DNA from: Vitrella brassicaformis CCMP3155
Lineage: Eukaryota; Protista; Chromerida
Direction of reading: 5' to 3'
Assembly (NCBI GenBank): GCA_001179505.1
Contig: CDMY01000305.1
Location: forward strand, 248,001-312,000
Length of the DNA: 64,000 nt
Below are positions 9,005 through 13,569 of the stretch, one piece after another (the first letter of the stretch is position 1; the number at the start of each line of letters is the position of its first letter). Below the pieces are notes generated by a model. The model did not search any database. It was not told the DNA's origin and worked only from the letters and a program-made list of their open reading frames with translations. The translations under genes and the position numbers were made by a program.

Positions 9005-12000
9005 CTACTTGCTGCACACGCCGCCCACGCCACAGGACGTCAGGGCGAGCTCAGCCAGGGCGTCGTCATCTTCAGCACCCACACCATGGCCATTGGCACC
9101 ATCTGCAGCAGCTGGTGTCTGCCTATCATAGGCCAGGTCGTGTGCAGGCAGCCGAGAGCCGTTAGTGGACGTCTCTGCTTGGGTGTGGTTCTTGTAGAGC
9201 GACGCTGCCAGGGCGTCGATGTCATTGGTACGGCCGCTGTCAGTGTCATCCTCACCACCAGCAGCACTGCTCGTCGTCTGAGAAGGCGCGGCTGCCGTGT
9301 CCCTTGCTTGTGGTTGGTGTGTGGCCTTGTTGGTCACTGTGCTGACCGACATCAGGGGCTTCAACGCCTGAAGGAAGGCGAGCAACACAATACAAAACAA
9401 GGCACACACACACAGACAGGGAGAGAGGCAATGGGTTCTGTCTGTCTGTCTGTCTGTGTGACCTGCATGAGGCTGTTGAACAGGTTGGGCAGCTCATACT
9501 CTTGCTGTGACAGCAGCACCTTGATGCGATGACGCTGCATGGAATCAATGGATGGCCGTATGAGCCAGCACACACACACACGGGGCGTGTGGATGCACTG
9601 CACTCATCTGCTGTGCTGGTGGGGCGTTAACAGACTAGCTAGACTGGCGCACCTACCTCCTTTGGGGCGGCGAAGCATGCCGGGCAGTTGTCAGTGATGA
9701 CGGGCAGCTTGTTGGCCGCGGCGAACTCGGCCGTGGCGCTTTCCCTGGCGTACACCAATGGCCGACACACACGCAGCGGCGCCCCGTCGGATTGTGTGGT
9801 GTAGTGGGCCTTCATGGTGTTAAGAGTGCCGTTGTTGAAGGCCGACATGACGAACGACTCGGCCACATCGTCGAGGTGCTGCCCCAGGCACAGCACACTG
9901 TAGCCGTGCTGCTTCATGCACGAGTAGAGCAGGCCGCGCTTCAGCCGCGCGCAGAAGGCACAGATGGACACCCGCTTGGCCGACATGTGGGTGCGCGCCA
10001 ACTCAATGATCGGGAAACTCAGCAAATGGTACGGCACACCTGAGGTCAGTGAGACACACACAGAGAGAACACGTGTGTGTGTGTGTGTGTGTGTGGATGT
10101 CATGTGGTCGCACCGAGTGATTTGAGGTAAGGTATGAGCGATCTTGGGTTGTACTCGGGCGTCTGGGGGTCCACAGTCGCCGCAGCGATCTCAAACCGGA
10201 TGGGCGCACGTCGCTGACACTCCTGCACACACACGCACACACAAAGTCATACACGCATGCACACACGAGGAGAGAGACCTCTCCCCCTCGGCTCACTCAC
10301 TCACCATGAGTATGTGGAGCATGGTGAGGGAGTCCTTGCCGCCCGACAGCCCCACAAGCAGCCGGTCGCCATCGCGAATCATGTCGAAATCCCTTATCGC
10401 AGAACCCACGCGACGCCGAAGAGCCGCTGACACCTTCAGCGCACTTGGTGCCGAGGGGGGGGCTGCCGGCGGCTCGGGTGTTCCTTCCGTGTCGATGGGA
10501 GTATGGTCAATGTCGCCATCCACTGCAGCTGCTGGTGCTGCATGGGGTGGTGTTGCTTGTGGGCGGGGTGGTGTGGCTGTGCCGTTTGTAGTCGTCTGTT
10601 GGTGTTGTTGTGTCCGGCTTCCTGCTCTCACTTGGAAACACGACACGCGCGGCCGTGACCGGTCGGCCGACGAGGGCCTGAAAGCCGATGTGGATGTGGC
10701 GAAGAGCAGGCTCCTAGACGCCTCCCCACCCACAGTGGCGCCCTCCTGGCCCCTCCTGACCGCCTCAGCAGCATCGGCAGGCATCGCGAACCACAGCAGC
10801 GGGGCCGTCTCTTCAGGAAGGGGCGGGCACCTGACCTGGGAGAGGGGGAGGGTGGTCTCGCCCTCGTGCAGCGAGTCCACTACCTCGTCCGCCCTAGTGA
10901 CCAGCTCGTCAAGGGCCGGCGCTGGGTGGTCGCCATCGATCTGTGCGCGCGCCTTGGTGCCGGCATGAGAGAGGTGGAATGTCGAGAGCCACTGCCGCGT
11001 GTGGTGGGGCTTGTGTAGGCGGTGCTCCCACTCGCCGGTCTCGGGGACGAATGTGTAAGCCGTTAGCATTCGCCACCCCTTGTCGGCGACCCACTCCACC
11101 GCCGTCGCCATGGCGTCCACCTGCTGGTCGGTCATGGTGAAGTGCACACCCACTCGCACGAAGCCTGGTCGGAGCACCTCCTGGCCCGTGTGGTGCAGCA
11201 AGGACATGAACTCGGCTGTGAGGGCCTCGGAGAGACCGAGCAGGTACTGGGCATAGGGGCCGGCGCACGCACACCCGCCGCGGGCCTGCACACACACACA
11301 CACACATTTTCAGACAGACAGACAGACAGACAGAGAGACAGGTGCGGGCCGATGTGTGTGTGTGGTGTGTGTGGGGTGGCGGTCACCTGGATGCCGAAGA
11401 GGTCGTTGAGGAGGGCCACGACAAAGTGGTAGTGGAGGTAGAGGCCGCTGCCGCTCGTCCATACGGCTGTGCCACCACAAGGAGGGTACTGCACCATGAA
11501 GGACAGGATCCCCACCCGACCGCCCTCGTCGTATGGACCGTCGCCGAGCATGTGGATCCTGCACCACACACATCCATTCACCGATGTGTGTGTGTGTCTG
11601 TTGGGCCACCCACCGTGGGTGCTTGGACCATCGCTGCTGCAGCCGTTGTGCGAGGATGGCCTCCCTCCTCTGTATGAGCTGTGTGGGAAGGAGTGAGTGT
11701 AGGCGGTACACCAGGCCAGCCCGGATGCAGCCCACCACGTCGGGCGTCCCAGCCTCCTCCCTCTCCTCAGCATTCTGACTCCCACATACATACACACACG
11801 CAGCCTCACATCGATGGGGCGATTGGTGTGTCGGTGTGTGTATTTGTGTGTGTACCTCGATGTAAGTGTGGCCTTCACTGCTGACGAAGAAGACGACTCC
11901 TCCGCCGGGCTCGGCCGGCACCCAATTCTGAAGCAGGCGCTTCTTGGCCAACAACACACCTGGTGTGGCGGGTCCTCCCAGCAATTTGTGTGGCGACAGG

Positions 12001-13569
12001 AAGGCCACGTCCATGTGGCTGCTGGGCCGGTCAGGAGGGTTCATGTCAACACGCGCATGGCCAGCCACAGCCGCACAGTCCACACAGGATATCGCCTGCA
12101 CCAGGCGCACAGAGCAGATGGACACAAACACACGATTTATCCATCCCGTCTTCCTCTCCCCTCTCACTCGGTATCGGTGGAGCATTGCCGTGAGTGCGTC
12201 GATGTCCGGCACAACGCCCGTCACATTGGATGCACTGGTCAGCAGCCCCACAGGCAGGATGCGCCACCCACCGTCCAGCCCACGCCACACGTCAATCTCT
12301 CTCAACACCTCCTCCAGATGGCCCACAGACACCGCACCTGTCCCCTCGTCGATCTCAATATTGACCAGCCCCATGTGCAGACCAACACCACCACTCCCAC
12401 TGTCGTCACCATTCGCCGCCTGTCGGTCTCCCTGGGTGTATGGGAAGGCCGGATGTGACTTGAGCAGTTCTCTGAAGGGCAGTGACCACGAGTGGTGCGC
12501 TGTGGGATCGGTCAGGAAGACGACAGCCCGGCGAGAAGGGCCTGCGAGAGAGGGGGAGGGAGACGAGGGGCCGGGTCTGAGTTTCGCTTGATGGCCTTCA
12601 GAGTGCTGGTGGGCGCGATAGAGAGCCTCGTTCTTGAGTCGAATGCCGCACAGAGTGCACTCACAGGCGCCCCAACGGTCCTCTCGGAAATACCCGTCAC
12701 GCACAGCTGTCAGCCATTCATATGACGCACAATCCATTAGATGATGGAGAGGCTCGTCCATCCACGCAACGAAACGCACCTCCAGCTGCCGTCGCGTCGC
12801 GGATCTGTGCGTCCGGTGCTCTTGCGAGGTCACCGACGGCCCAGCCGCACCGCTCCATGATGGCCACGAACTTGGATATCGCACCCTGTGGATGCATCCA
12901 CCAGCAGGGCATTCCGACACAAACAATGGCCATCAATGGGTGGGTGGCGTCATGCTCACCGTGACCCCTGTGCCGGCGAATATGAGAGCATCCTCGTGGT
13001 TGGCATTCACGTACTGCTTGATGATCTGTCGCGCCTGCAACACACAAACACGCCCACATATGATGAGAGATATGCAGAGATTGTGTGAATGCGCCCTTGG
13101 TGCGATACCTCAGATCTGAAGTAAGTCGACTGTCTGGCTGTTGACGTGGTCAGGGTGTGCGTGTTACCGTAGAGAGGCAACACCTGCACCCACGGACAGG
13201 CAGACAGATTAGCGCAGAGGCAGGGACTAACGCTCAGTGCTGCAGCGGTACCTCTGTTCTGATGAAGTCCTCAATGCTCTCCAGGCTTCGCCCAGAGGCA
13301 GTGAAGTCAGCATACAGCAATCGACGGCTCCCTGACAACACCCACAACCACCCCCACATCAACGCACAAGCCACCATATATGGCAGCGTCGTGATTCTGA
13401 TCTGTTGTGTACCGAATGGTGTCTTGATGACTGCATTCTCTCCGATGATCTGTCGCCTCAGGCCCTCACACACATCGTCGAACGAGGCGTCATCGAACTG
13501 GTGGCTTGTCGGCGTTCCACCGTCATGCTTCGATGAGTGACCCTTGTCAAAAACGTAGCGGACAGGCAT
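9005..13569 (-). CDS. Fusion of a PLP-dependent class-V aminotransferase (cysteine desulfurase-like) with an inserted C2H2 zinc finger and a TtcA-like PP-loop tRNA thiolase; multi-exon
   Basis: N-terminal [36 protein letters not shown] (PLP lysine), [10 protein letters not shown] and [11 protein letters not shown]-terminal [32 protein letters not shown] and DNCPAC. Exons join in frame across GT-AG introns. Confidence 0.88.

What the first reader, a model, noticed from the sequence alone, without database searches (positions are those of the whole stretch)
9005..13569. Single-chain cysteine desulfurase-TtcA fusion: a possible self-contained sulfur relay for tRNA thiolation
One spliced reading frame joins two enzymes. 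The first is a PLP class-V enzyme (SPHK lysine; RGGCACAG candidate persulfide loop, resembling SufS/CsdA RxGHHCA). The second is a PP-loop TtcA-like enzyme with SGGKDS, CxxC (CAFC), GQHLDD and CPAC. Bacterial TtcA makes s2C32 using an Fe-S cluster and needs a separate desulfurase (established), and s2C32 is not a well-documented eukaryotic modification. Inference: the fusion channels sulfur directly to the thiolase, implying s2C32 or a new thio-modification in this alveolate. I recall similar domain pairs in some other eukaryotic annotations, so the architecture may not be unique; I know of no functional characterisation.
Basis: partly seen in the sequence, partly recalled or inferred. Interest (0 to 1): 0.72.

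Follow-up and report, generated by a model that had tools for sequence, protein, structure and literature searches.

The report
Known desulfurase–TtcA fusion gene (Vitrella)
This is a real 14-exon gene of the alga Vitrella brassicaformis that joins a SufS-like cysteine desulfurase to a TtcA-like tRNA-thiolating enzyme, but the same fusion is already annotated in thousands of eukaryotes and has been described in Toxoplasma and in the sea slug Aplysia, so it is a further member of a known family.

Summary
Window 13569-9005 (minus strand) holds a 14-exon gene. Its product is identical to the public 1170-aa Vitrella brassicaformis protein P0158.

- **N-terminal module (1-712).** It has a type-II (SufS/CsdA-like) cysteine desulfurase fold. 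The PLP lysine K381, the HHS histidines and Cys542 are in place, and Cys542 aligns with the SufS catalytic cysteine.
- **C-terminal domain (816-1065).** It is TtcA-like, with the SGGKDS PP-loop and the three cysteines that bind the [4Fe-4S] cluster in E. coli TtcA.
- **Junction.** The domain junction lies inside exon 10, so the fusion does not depend on any splice call. RNA-like contigs confirm four introns.

It is not novel. The architecture occurs across alveolates, stramenopiles, Diplonema and most invertebrate animals. Toxoplasma TGGT1_294380 was named TgTtcA in 2022. A 2026 preprint reports s2C32 in Aplysia tRNA together with this "IscS-TtcA" fusion.

Three points are new here:
- A JAZ-type C2H2 zinc finger is inserted in the desulfurase module of many protist forms and of no animal form examined.
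- The TtcA domain belongs to a sub-clade shared with sulfur-oxidising Proteobacteria, and that sub-clade scores below NCBI's TtcA equivalog cut-off.
- The true flexible linker is only about 100 residues.

Direct sulfur channelling remains untested. The scan had not noted this gene before on other DNA.

The parts
9005..13569 (-). Whole gene, ATG 13569 to TAG 9007-9005. It has 14 exons: 13569-13413, 13331-13252, 13183-13109, 13034-12960, 12885-12780, 12706-12168, 12095-11856, 11774-11614, 11558-11387, 11285-10305, 10222-10114, 10039-9657, 9534-9463, 9367-9008. The 3'UTR reaches at least 8876.
   Evidence: P0158 maps 100% onto the exons. GT..AG boundaries are. tblastn of dinoflagellate orthologues hits every block.
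10779..13569 (-). N-terminal module, residues 1-712 (introns included in this span). It is a type-II (SufS/CsdA-like) cysteine desulfurase fold plus an ordered C-terminal extension that ends at the LLWFAMP motif (10799-10779).
   Evidence: Profile search against PDB: SufS, CsdB and CsdA, E 5.6e-50. AF2 model: pLDDT 85.8, pTM 0.87. Foldseek top 50 are all SufS-type, TM 0.81-0.89. Bacterial stand-alone relatives end at LRWFxLP.
12579..12689 (-). C2H2 zinc-finger insert (residues 171-207; C181, C184, H197, H203) inside the desulfurase module. It is of the JAZ / zf-met type.
   Evidence: Pfam zf-C2H2_jaz is weak in Vitrella (E 0.03-0.07) but matches 5 of 25 orthologues at E<=0.01. The insert is conserved in alveolates and Diplonema. 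The predicted fold is beta-beta-alpha with pLDDT 77-87. It is absent from 96 of 96 animal fusions.
12489..12497 (-). HHS (H235, H236, S237), the equivalent of the SufS EHHAN motif.
   Evidence: Aligned and nearly invariant.
11985..11996 (-). SPHK. K381 is the PLP Schiff-base lysine.
   Evidence: It aligns with SufS SGHK and is invariant in 41 sequences.
11253..11282 (-). [10 protein letters not shown] active-site loop. C542 is the equivalent of the SufS catalytic cysteine. C540 is an extra cysteine that is invariant in this family.
   Evidence: HMM alignment to SufS RAGHHCAQPL. R537, G539, C540, C542, A543 and P545 are invariant.
10446..10754 (-). Flexible P/A/T-rich linker, residues 713-815.
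   Evidence: pLDDT is about 28-55 in the full-length model, and the region is not conserved in A1.
9540..10445 (-). TtcA-like PP-loop domain, residues 816-1065, spanning exons 10-13. It holds SGGKDS at 10346-10329, CAFC (C925, C928) at 9962-9951, GQHLDD at 9884-9867 and CPAC (C1017, C1020) at 9686-9675.
   Evidence: NCBIfam TtcA NF007972 scores 208-211 bits. BLASTP against E. coli TtcA gives 34% identity, E 5e-47.
9008..9367 (-). Last exon. The first residues (ALKPLMS...) finish the TtcA domain. The rest is a disordered, poorly conserved tail (residues about 1066-1170).
   Evidence: pLDDT is about 30. An RNA-like contig covers it and the 3'UTR.

Best explanation
This is one nuclear gene of Vitrella brassicaformis. 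It encodes a bifunctional, probably cytosolic, tRNA-thiolating enzyme that is the orthologue of Toxoplasma TgTtcA and of the Aplysia 'IscS-TtcA' protein.

Shown here: the N-terminal module is a SufS-type PLP enzyme with its catalytic residues intact. The C-terminal domain is a TtcA-like ATP pyrophosphatase with the three cysteines that bind a [4Fe-4S] cluster in E. coli TtcA. A disordered tether of about 100 residues joins the two modules.

Inferred mechanism: the PLP module strips sulfur from L-cysteine and forms a persulfide on Cys542. The tethered TtcA domain adenylates C2 of cytidine 32 in some tRNAs. Using its Fe-S cluster, it takes up that sulfur to make 2-thiocytidine (s2C32). No free IscS-type donor is needed for this step.

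In alveolate and Diplonema forms, a JAZ-type C2H2 zinc finger inserted in the PLP module may add an RNA contact. This is also inferred.
For: - **Gene model.** P0158 maps 100% onto 14 GT..AG exons. The domain junction lies inside one exon. Spliced RNA-like contigs are present.
- **Desulfurase module.** The profile search against PDB gives only type-II desulfurases at the top (E 5.6e-50). K381, H235/H236, D350 and C542 fall on the SufS catalytic positions. The AF2 model is confident (pTM 0.87). The Foldseek top 50 are all SufS, CsdB or Nfs2.
- **TtcA domain.** The NCBIfam TtcA model is by far the best match (211 bits, against TilS_N 63 and NcsA and TtuA 49). The domain is 34% identical to E. coli TtcA. 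C925, C928 and C1020 align with C122, C125 and C222, which are the essential cluster ligands (PMC4081106).
- **In vitro precedent.** In vitro, TtcA needs only cysteine plus a desulfurase, ATP and DTT (PMC4081106).
- **Conservation.** The fusion is kept in hundreds to thousands of eukaryotic proteins.
- **Experimental links.** s2C32 was detected by LC-MS in Aplysia tRNA-Lys(UUU), and Aplysia carries the fusion (bioRxiv 10.64898/2026.09.27.754811). TgTtcA is expressed at full length and localises to cytosol and nucleus (PMC9420914).
Against: - No enzyme activity has been measured for any member of the fusion family.
- The TtcA domain scores below NCBI's equivalog cut-off (208-211 against 272). 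It sits in a sub-clade with stand-alone proteins of sulfur-oxidising bacteria, not with canonical TtcA.
- The PLP module scores far below the SufS cut-off (98 against 475). It carries a CxC loop in place of HHC.
- Type-II desulfurases normally need a SufE, SufU or CsdE acceptor, and none is visible in the protein.
- The full-length fold shows no fixed interface between the modules (pTM 0.62).
- RNA coverage does not bridge the two domains.
- No s2C data exist for Vitrella.
Confidence: 0.7

Rival explanations
1. The fused desulfurase mainly builds or repairs the oxygen-labile [4Fe-4S] cluster of its own TtcA domain. On this reading it does not donate the sulfur atom that ends up in tRNA, or it does both.
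For: In bacteria s2C32 needs IscU as well as IscS, because TtcA must be loaded with a cluster, and that cluster is oxygen-sensitive (PMC4081106). The protein is cytosolic/nuclear in Toxoplasma (PMC9420914), away from the mitochondrial ISC machinery.
Against: No scaffold-like (IscU, SufU or SufB) region is found by Pfam or NCBIfam. In vitro, the cysteine/desulfurase system supplies the sulfur for s2C (PMC4081106). The two roles are not exclusive.
Confidence: 0.15
2. The eukaryote plus sulfur-oxidiser 'TtcA-like' sub-clade is not an s2C32 synthase. It thiolates another position, another nucleoside or another substrate.
For: Scores lie below the TtcA equivalog cut-off for Vitrella (208-211 bits) and for Thiofilum, Acidithiobacillus and Thiocapsa proteins (213-226 bits), whereas canonical TtcAs score 281-514. 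The sub-clade is split from canonical TtcA with support 83/98 and in 100% of bootstrap trees. The Aplysia target (tRNA-Lys-UUU) differs from the E. coli targets (Arg and Ser tRNAs).
Against: All catalytic and cluster-binding residues of TtcA are kept. The only eukaryote examined that carries the fusion has s2C at position 32 (Aplysia preprint). No other family scores close.
Confidence: 0.1
3. The two halves act as separate proteins. They arise either by cleavage in the disordered linker or from an internal transcription start, so no intramolecular relay exists.
For: The linker 713-815 is disordered. TgTtcA shows several smaller HA-reactive bands (PMC9420914). The Aplysia authors raise cleavage as a possibility. 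RNA contigs here cover only the 3' half plus one 5' fragment.
Against: A single open exon spans the junction. A full-length TgTtcA band is seen (PMC9420914). The gene order and fusion are kept across very distant eukaryotes, which is hard to explain if co-translation were irrelevant. Even after cleavage, 1:1 synthesis would still couple the two halves.
Confidence: 0.1
4. The N-module is not a cysteine desulfurase. It is another class-V PLP enzyme, for example a selenocysteine lyase or a C-S lyase acting on a different thiol donor.
For: It scores only 98 bits on the SufS subfamily model (cut-off 475). No curated NCBIfam family covers it or its bacterial stand-alone relatives. The loop is CxC instead of HHC. 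The SufS Gln203 position is Ala in the profile alignment. Bacterial relatives are not next to ttcA or suf genes.
Against: Every top sequence and structure match is a bona fide type-II desulfurase, and the Lys, His, Asp, Arg and Cys positions are kept. SufS/CsdB enzymes themselves act on both cysteine and selenocysteine.
Confidence: 0.08

Closest known systems
Aplysia californica 'IscS-TtcA' (LOC101861551, 1177 aa; bioRxiv 10.64898/2026.09.27.754811)
   Same: The order is the same: an N-terminal CsdA/SufS-like PLP domain, a poorly conserved linker, then a TtcA-like domain. The same conserved cysteines are present (a CxC pair in the PLP domain; C...CSFC...CPAC in the TtcA domain). Animal fusions such as Capitella P0101 group with Vitrella in the tree and share the motifs.
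   Different: Animal forms have EHHSN and no zinc-finger insert (0 of 96). The Aplysia linker is about 405 aa, against about 100 truly disordered residues here. s2C32 has been measured in Aplysia but not in Vitrella.
Toxoplasma gondii TgTtcA, TGGT1_294380 (PMC9420914)
   Same: It is an alveolate orthologue with one PP-loop domain and Aminotran_5 segments in one protein. The coccidian Besnoitia orthologue P0238 is among Vitrella's nearest neighbours in the tree.
   Different: The coccidian proteins are much longer (about 1650 aa) because of insertions. TgTtcA has been localised (cytosol and nucleus), but neither its activity nor a knock-out was reported.
Bacterial TtcA plus IscS (E. coli b1344; PMC4081106)
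   Same: The PP-loop is kept, as are the three [4Fe-4S] cysteines, GxHxDD and overall 34% identity. The chemistry needs a cysteine desulfurase, ATP and a reductant.
   Different: In bacteria the two proteins are separate, and the donor is a type-I desulfurase (IscS). Here a type-II-like desulfurase is fused in cis. The Vitrella domain lacks the roughly 60-residue C-terminal extension of E. coli TtcA and falls below the equivalog cut-off.
Stand-alone TtcA-like proteins of sulfur-oxidising Proteobacteria (Thiofilum L008, Acidithiobacillus L011, Thiocapsa L044)
   Same: They are 47-57% identical over about 240 residues and share the CxFCAR(M/L)KRG and DNCPACF signatures. Their sub-threshold TtcA scores are similar. 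They are the sister group of the eukaryotic domains.
   Different: They are about 250-aa single-domain proteins with no desulfurase fused or adjacent.
Type-II cysteine desulfurases SufS / CsdA / plastid Nfs2
   Same: The fold, the PLP lysine, the HH motif and the short catalytic-cysteine loop after a conserved Arg are all shared.
   Different: The loop is CxC instead of HHC. The Vitrella module also has an ordered C-terminal extension of about 110 residues ending in LRWFxLP and a zinc-finger insert, and no SufE, SufU or CsdE partner is identified.
SufE-MnmA fusion of apicomplexans and Vitrella (TgMnmA; scan note s1-212019)
   Same: It is a second case in the same lineage where a sulfur-relay component is fused to a tRNA thiolase.
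   Different: There the fused part is the sulfur acceptor (SufE), not the desulfurase. The enzyme is plastid-targeted and makes s2U34.

Membership tests
TtcA (tRNA-cytidine(32) 2-sulfurtransferase) | [quoted passage not shown] | tested here: met
   SGGKDS is at residues 849-854 and is invariant in 18 sequences including E. coli TtcA.
TtcA (tRNA-cytidine(32) 2-sulfurtransferase) | Three cysteines that bind the [4Fe-4S] cluster (E. coli C122, C125, C222) | tested here: met
   C925, C928 and C1020 align with them. Their essentiality is taken from PMC4081106.
TtcA (tRNA-cytidine(32) 2-sulfurtransferase) | Reaches the curated score of NCBIfam equivalog NF007972 (272 bits) | tested here: not met
   The score is 208.4-210.8 bits. 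E. coli scores 514, Vreelandella 479 and a Bacillota MAG 281.
TtcA (tRNA-cytidine(32) 2-sulfurtransferase) | Closer to TtcA than to TilS, TtuA or NcsA/Ncs6 | tested here: met
   TtcA scores 211 bits, against TilS_N 63, NcsA 49 and TtuA 49. There are no CxxC zinc-finger pairs upstream of the PP-loop. The tree was rooted on TilS; TtuA and Ncs6 were not included in it.
TtcA (tRNA-cytidine(32) 2-sulfurtransferase) | Produces s2C at position 32 of tRNA | not testable with these tools
   There is only indirect support: s2C32 occurs in Aplysia, which carries the fusion.
Type-II cysteine desulfurase (SufS/CsdA) | PLP Schiff-base lysine and the HH/Asp PLP-contact residues | tested here: met
   K381, H235/H236 and D350 align with the SufS positions and are invariant or nearly so.
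Type-II cysteine desulfurase (SufS/CsdA) | Catalytic cysteine on the short loop R-x-G-H-H-C-A | tested here: met
   R537-G-G-C-A-C542-A aligns column for column with RAGHHCA. The two His positions are Cys and Ala here.
Type-II cysteine desulfurase (SufS/CsdA) | Fold | tested here: met
   The AF2 model has pTM 0.87. The Foldseek top 50 are all SufS, CsdB or Nfs2, with TM by target 0.81-0.89.
Type-II cysteine desulfurase (SufS/CsdA) | Reaches the NCBIfam SufS subfamily cut-off (475 bits) | tested here: not met
   The score is 95-98 bits. Stand-alone relatives score 103-127 bits. This is an uncurated sister branch.
Type-II cysteine desulfurase (SufS/CsdA) | Desulfurase activity and a dedicated persulfide acceptor | not testable with these tools
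   No SufE, SufU or CsdE-like region is found in the protein. The rest of the genome was not searched.
Eukaryotic CsdA-like/TtcA-like fusion (TgTtcA, Aplysia IscS-TtcA) | One polypeptide with the PLP module N-terminal and the TtcA-like domain C-terminal | tested here: met
   Shown. All 25 aligned orthologues carry both Pfam domains.
Eukaryotic CsdA-like/TtcA-like fusion (TgTtcA, Aplysia IscS-TtcA) | TtcA domain groups with those of other eukaryotic fusions | tested here: met
   The 20 eukaryotic rows form one side of a branch, with support 79/89 and in 76% of bootstrap trees. The top 150 of 1.84 billion representatives are almost all long fusion proteins.
C2H2 zinc finger, JAZ / zf-met (dsRNA-binding) type | C-x2-C ... 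H-x5-H spacing and beta-beta-alpha fold | tested here: met
   C181-x2-C184-x12-H197-x5-H203. Strands 179-181 and 186-188 and helix 191-198 are predicted with pLDDT 77-87.
C2H2 zinc finger, JAZ / zf-met (dsRNA-binding) type | Reaches the Pfam gathering score (22.6 bits) | tested here: not met
   Vitrella scores 13.8-14.9 bits. Five of 25 orthologues match at E<=0.01, best 2.6e-4.

The most novel reading that the evidence does not exclude
The most novel reading that the evidence does not exclude has two parts. First, the protist-specific JAZ-type zinc finger inside the desulfurase module binds the tRNA helix, so that sulfur mobilisation is gated by substrate RNA. Second, the eukaryote plus sulfur-oxidiser TtcA-like sub-clade has a substrate range different from canonical TtcA (other tRNAs, or another position). 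Together these would define a distinct, self-sufficient thiolation system and not a simple TtcA orthologue.
Probability: 0.15. Interest if true: 0.6.

Novelty: new member of a known kind. Interest (0 to 1): 0.3.

Why it matters
s2C32 was long regarded as a bacterial and archaeal tRNA modification. The wide spread of this fusion, together with the 2026 Aplysia data, suggests it is an old eukaryotic trait that model organisms (yeast, plants, mammals) lost.

The Vitrella gene adds a free-living chromerid member. It shows that the alveolate form carries an RNA-type zinc finger. It also points to sulfur-oxidising Proteobacteria as the nearest prokaryotic relatives of the thiolase half.

As a single discovery it is not new. 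Its value is as a clean, intron-confirmed reference model for a family whose enzymology has not been studied. The family includes genes of parasites (Toxoplasma, Cryptosporidium, Perkinsus).

Tried and rejected
- **Gene-neighbourhood support for a desulfurase-TtcA link in bacteria.** The actinobacterial stand-alone relative P0038 has no ttcA nearby. None of 80 bacterial TtcA-like loci has an N-module-like gene within 4 kb. An Aminotran_5 gene directly downstream in 4 loci turned out to be an AGXT/PhnW-type transaminase, not a desulfurase. A rhodanese gene lies nearby in only 5 of 57 loci.
- **Bacterial fusions.** None was found. A metagenome fusion with prokaryote-style annotation (P0202) sits on a eukaryotic contig.
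- **phmmer of the junction exon alone against PDB.** This gave nothing useful; the profile search was needed.
- **Solved TtcA structure.** No solved TtcA structure is detectable by sequence; the closest are TtuA, NcsA and TilS.
- **Full-length AF2 as a test for a fixed interface.** pTM was 0.62 with a disordered linker, so there is no evidence either way for channelling.
- **RNA evidence for one transcript.** Only thin, contig-level runs exist, and no contig bridges the domains.
- **tRNA genes in the window, to inspect C32.** None was found.
- **Joining the exons myself.** I did not do this. The public protein P0158, returned by a tool and identical to the exon translations, was used instead.

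
Full report
**What is in the sequence**

The minus strand of window 13569-9005 carries a multi-exon gene. The motifs are [30 protein letters not shown] and CPAC.

Pfam finds Aminotran_5 and the PP-loop family ATP_bind_3. NCBIfam ranks the TtcA equivalog model first for each of the three C-terminal exon pieces. It ranks SufS/CsdA first for the N-terminal part.

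An exhaustive search of 1.84 billion representatives with one TtcA exon returned a 100% match. The match is P0158, a 1170-aa protein of Vitrella brassicaformis CCMP3155. NCBI calls it 'unnamed protein product' and UniRef calls it 'C2H2-type domain-containing protein'.

P0158 maps residue for residue onto 14 exons of the window. All 13 introns have GT..AG ends. The window is therefore Vitrella, and the gene is already annotated as one protein.

All whole-protein work used P0158.

**Is it really one gene?**

Exon 10 (11285-10305) is a single open frame. It contains the desulfurase active-site loop, the end of the PLP module, the linker and the TtcA PP-loop. The fusion therefore does not rest on a splice prediction.

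RNA-like Logan contigs that are 100% identical (run X1) join 10218-10111, 10036-9657, 9534-9467 and 9370-8876. They also join 12332-12167 to 12094-12073. A further contig runs from 10694 to the exon 10 donor and then leaves the genome sequence.

Four introns are thus confirmed, and the linker is transcribed together with the TtcA part. The run is thin. Nothing covers 10695-12072 or 12333-13569, so a full-length mRNA is not directly shown.

**The N-terminal module**

A profile of 21 N-modules and stand-alone relatives was searched against PDB sequences. It hits only type-II cysteine desulfurases at the top (SufS, CsdB, CsdA; best E 5.6e-50). Type-I enzymes (IscS, NFS1, NifS) follow at about 1e-8.

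In that alignment:
- SPHK falls on the SufS PLP lysine.
- HHS falls on EHHAN.
- wDxAA falls on vDGAQ.
- [10 protein letters not shown] falls column for column on RAGHHCAQPL.

Cys542 is therefore the equivalent of the catalytic persulfide cysteine. Cys540 replaces a histidine. Both cysteines, R537 and K381 are invariant in 41 sequences.

An AlphaFold model of residues 1-720 is confident (pLDDT 85.8, pTM 0.87). Its 50 best Foldseek matches in the PDB are all SufS-type enzymes, with TM by target 0.81-0.89.

The module nevertheless scores far below the SufS subfamily cut-off (98 against 475 bits). No curated NCBIfam family covers it or its stand-alone relatives. It is an uncharacterised sister branch of SufS/CsdA.

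That branch has about 570-aa stand-alone members in Actinobacteria. It also has stand-alone paralogues in Perkinsus, Chromera and amphioxus. The bacterial proteins end exactly at an LRWFxLP motif. In Vitrella this motif is LLWFAMP (698-704).

The ordered module therefore runs to about residue 712. The true linker is only about 713-815, which is disordered in the full-length model.

**A zinc finger inside the desulfurase**

Residues 171-207 form a C-x2-C-x12-H-x5-H unit. It is predicted as beta-beta-alpha with pLDDT 77-87.

Pfam zf-C2H2_jaz and zf-met are below threshold for Vitrella. They match 5 of 25 orthologues at E<=0.01.

The insert is conserved in dinoflagellates, Perkinsus, Amoebophrya, chromerids, Cryptosporidium, coccidia and Diplonema. 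It is missing from oomycete, chrysophyte and Rhodelphis forms and from all 96 animal fusions checked.

JAZ and zf-met fingers are known as double-stranded-RNA binders (Pfam description). A tRNA contact is a reasonable idea but is untested.

**The C-terminal domain**

P0158 residues 816-1065 score 208-211 bits on the TtcA equivalog model. TilS_N scores 63, and NcsA and TtuA score 49.

The domain is 34% identical to E. coli TtcA (E 5e-47). C925, C928 and C1020 lie on C122, C125 and C222. These are the three residues shown to be essential and proposed as [4Fe-4S] ligands (PMC4081106).

There are no N-terminal CxxC zinc-finger pairs of the TtuA/Ncs6 type.

However, the score stays below NCBI's cut-off of 272.

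A scan of 185,579 prokaryotic species genomes found the nearest relatives (47-57% identity). They are 245-260-aa stand-alone proteins of sulfur-oxidising Proteobacteria. The groups include Thiofilum, Thiotrichaceae, Chromatiaceae, Acidithiobacillus and Hydrogenophilales/Thiobacillus.

These proteins also score only 213-226 bits. E. coli, Vreelandella and a Bacillota MAG score 514, 479 and 281.

In a maximum-likelihood tree (59 rows, TilS outgroup):
- The 20 eukaryotic domains form one side of a branch (support 79/89).
- Eukaryotes plus sulfur-oxidisers are split from canonical TtcA and a Campylobacterota clade (support 83/98, and 100% of bootstrap trees).

Their exclusion rests on the HMM scores.

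**How common is the fusion, and what is known?**

Both Pfam domains occur together in proteins of many lineages:
- Protists and coral: Symbiodiniaceae, Perkinsus, Amoebophrya, gregarines, Cardiosporidium, Cryptosporidium, Diplonema, Plasmopara, Paraphysomonas and Rhodelphis, plus the coral Acropora. Polarella, Chromera and Besnoitia also carry it.
- Animals: brachiopods, annelids, molluscs, echinoderms, hemichordates, amphioxus, tunicates, cnidarians, sponges, ticks, spiders, crustaceans and hemimetabolous insects. In this search 7999 of 8000 scored candidates had E<=1e-20.

Several of these proteins are already named 'tRNA-cytidine(32) 2-sulfurtransferase' or 'TtcA'.

Two papers describe the architecture:
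- Yang et al. 2022 (PMC9420914) named Toxoplasma TGGT1_294380 'TtcA' and noted its PP-loop and Aminotran_5 segments. They tagged it and saw a full-length band plus smaller ones. They localised it to cytosol and nucleus.
- A September 2026 preprint (10.64898/2026.09.27.754811) detected s2C32 in Aplysia tRNA-Lys(UUU). It identified the 1177-aa 'IscS-TtcA' fusion, showed it is conserved in 28 molluscs, and listed the same conserved cysteines.

No enzymology or genetics of the fusion exists yet.

**Most likely mechanism**

Shown: there are two folded modules with intact catalytic residues, tethered by a disordered linker.

Inferred from family knowledge:
- The PLP module makes a persulfide on Cys542 from L-cysteine.
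- The TtcA domain adenylates C32.
- With its Fe-S cluster, the TtcA domain transfers the sulfur.

E. coli TtcA needs only cysteine plus a desulfurase, ATP and DTT in vitro (PMC4081106). A cis-linked desulfurase could therefore make the enzyme self-sufficient for the sulfur donor in the cytosol.

Direct channelling is not shown. The full-length model has pTM 0.62 and no confident inter-module packing. Type-II desulfurases usually need an acceptor protein, and none is visible.

Rival readings cannot be excluded. They are a cluster-maintenance role, a different substrate for the sub-clade, cleavage into two proteins, and a PLP enzyme that is not a desulfurase. Each has less support.

**Negative results**

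Bacterial gene neighbourhoods gave no independent link between the two halves. No prokaryotic fusion was found, and a metagenome fusion lies on a eukaryotic contig. The window holds no tRNA gene.

**Verdict**

The gene is a further member of a widespread eukaryotic fusion family that is already annotated and recently described.

The modest new points are:
- the protist-specific zinc-finger insert;
- the redefinition of module and linker boundaries;
- the sub-threshold TtcA-like sub-clade shared with sulfur-oxidising bacteria.

An earlier scan note (s1-212019) records a SufE-MnmA fusion in the same genome. It is a parallel case of a sulfur-relay part fused to a tRNA thiolase.

Noticed in passing
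window 12579-12689 (-); orthologues in alignment A1: A C2H2 zinc finger of JAZ/zf-met type is inserted in the desulfurase module. It is present in 63 of 103 protist fusions checked and in 0 of 96 animal fusions. Forms without it have EHHSNLLPWRE, as bacteria do; forms with it have xHHSxxLPFRE.
   Followed up: partly
L008-L065 (for example L008:3965-4735, L011:3329-4096, L044:3974-4750): Sulfur-oxidising Proteobacteria carry a short (about 250 aa) TtcA-like protein. It is 47-57% identical to the eukaryotic domain and scores below NCBI's TtcA equivalog cut-off. Whether these genomes also hold a canonical ttcA was not checked.
   Followed up: partly
window 10779-10799 (-); P0038, P0053, P0029, P0117, P0120 C-termini: The LRWFxLP motif marks the exact C-terminus of about 570-aa actinobacterial stand-alone relatives of the N-module. 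It is kept in all fusions, inside what looks like 'linker'. Its function is unknown.
   Followed up: partly
P0001, P0007 (Perkinsus), P0026 (Chromera Cvel_10307), P0056 (Branchiostoma): Stand-alone paralogues of the CxC-type desulfurase module exist beside the fusion in several eukaryotes. The Aplysia preprint also mentions one. Their role is unknown.
   Followed up: no
P0002 and P0006 C-termini (Symbiodiniaceae): Symbiodiniaceae orthologues end in a hydrophobic stretch of about 20 residues followed by basic residues. This may be a tail anchor. Vitrella lacks it.
   Followed up: no
window 10226-10243 and 11565-11601 (introns 10 and 8): Short AC/GT-rich intron stretches attract many unrelated genomic contigs (depth 5-7 times the flanks) and loose ends in the DNA runs. 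They are dispersed simple repeats in Vitrella introns.
   Followed up: no
L017:2059-2484 and four other loci (L025, L037, L043, L050): A single-domain rhodanese gene lies 1-3 genes upstream of the bacterial TtcA-like gene in 5 of 57 loci. This is a weak hint of a sulfur-carrier partner.
   Followed up: partly
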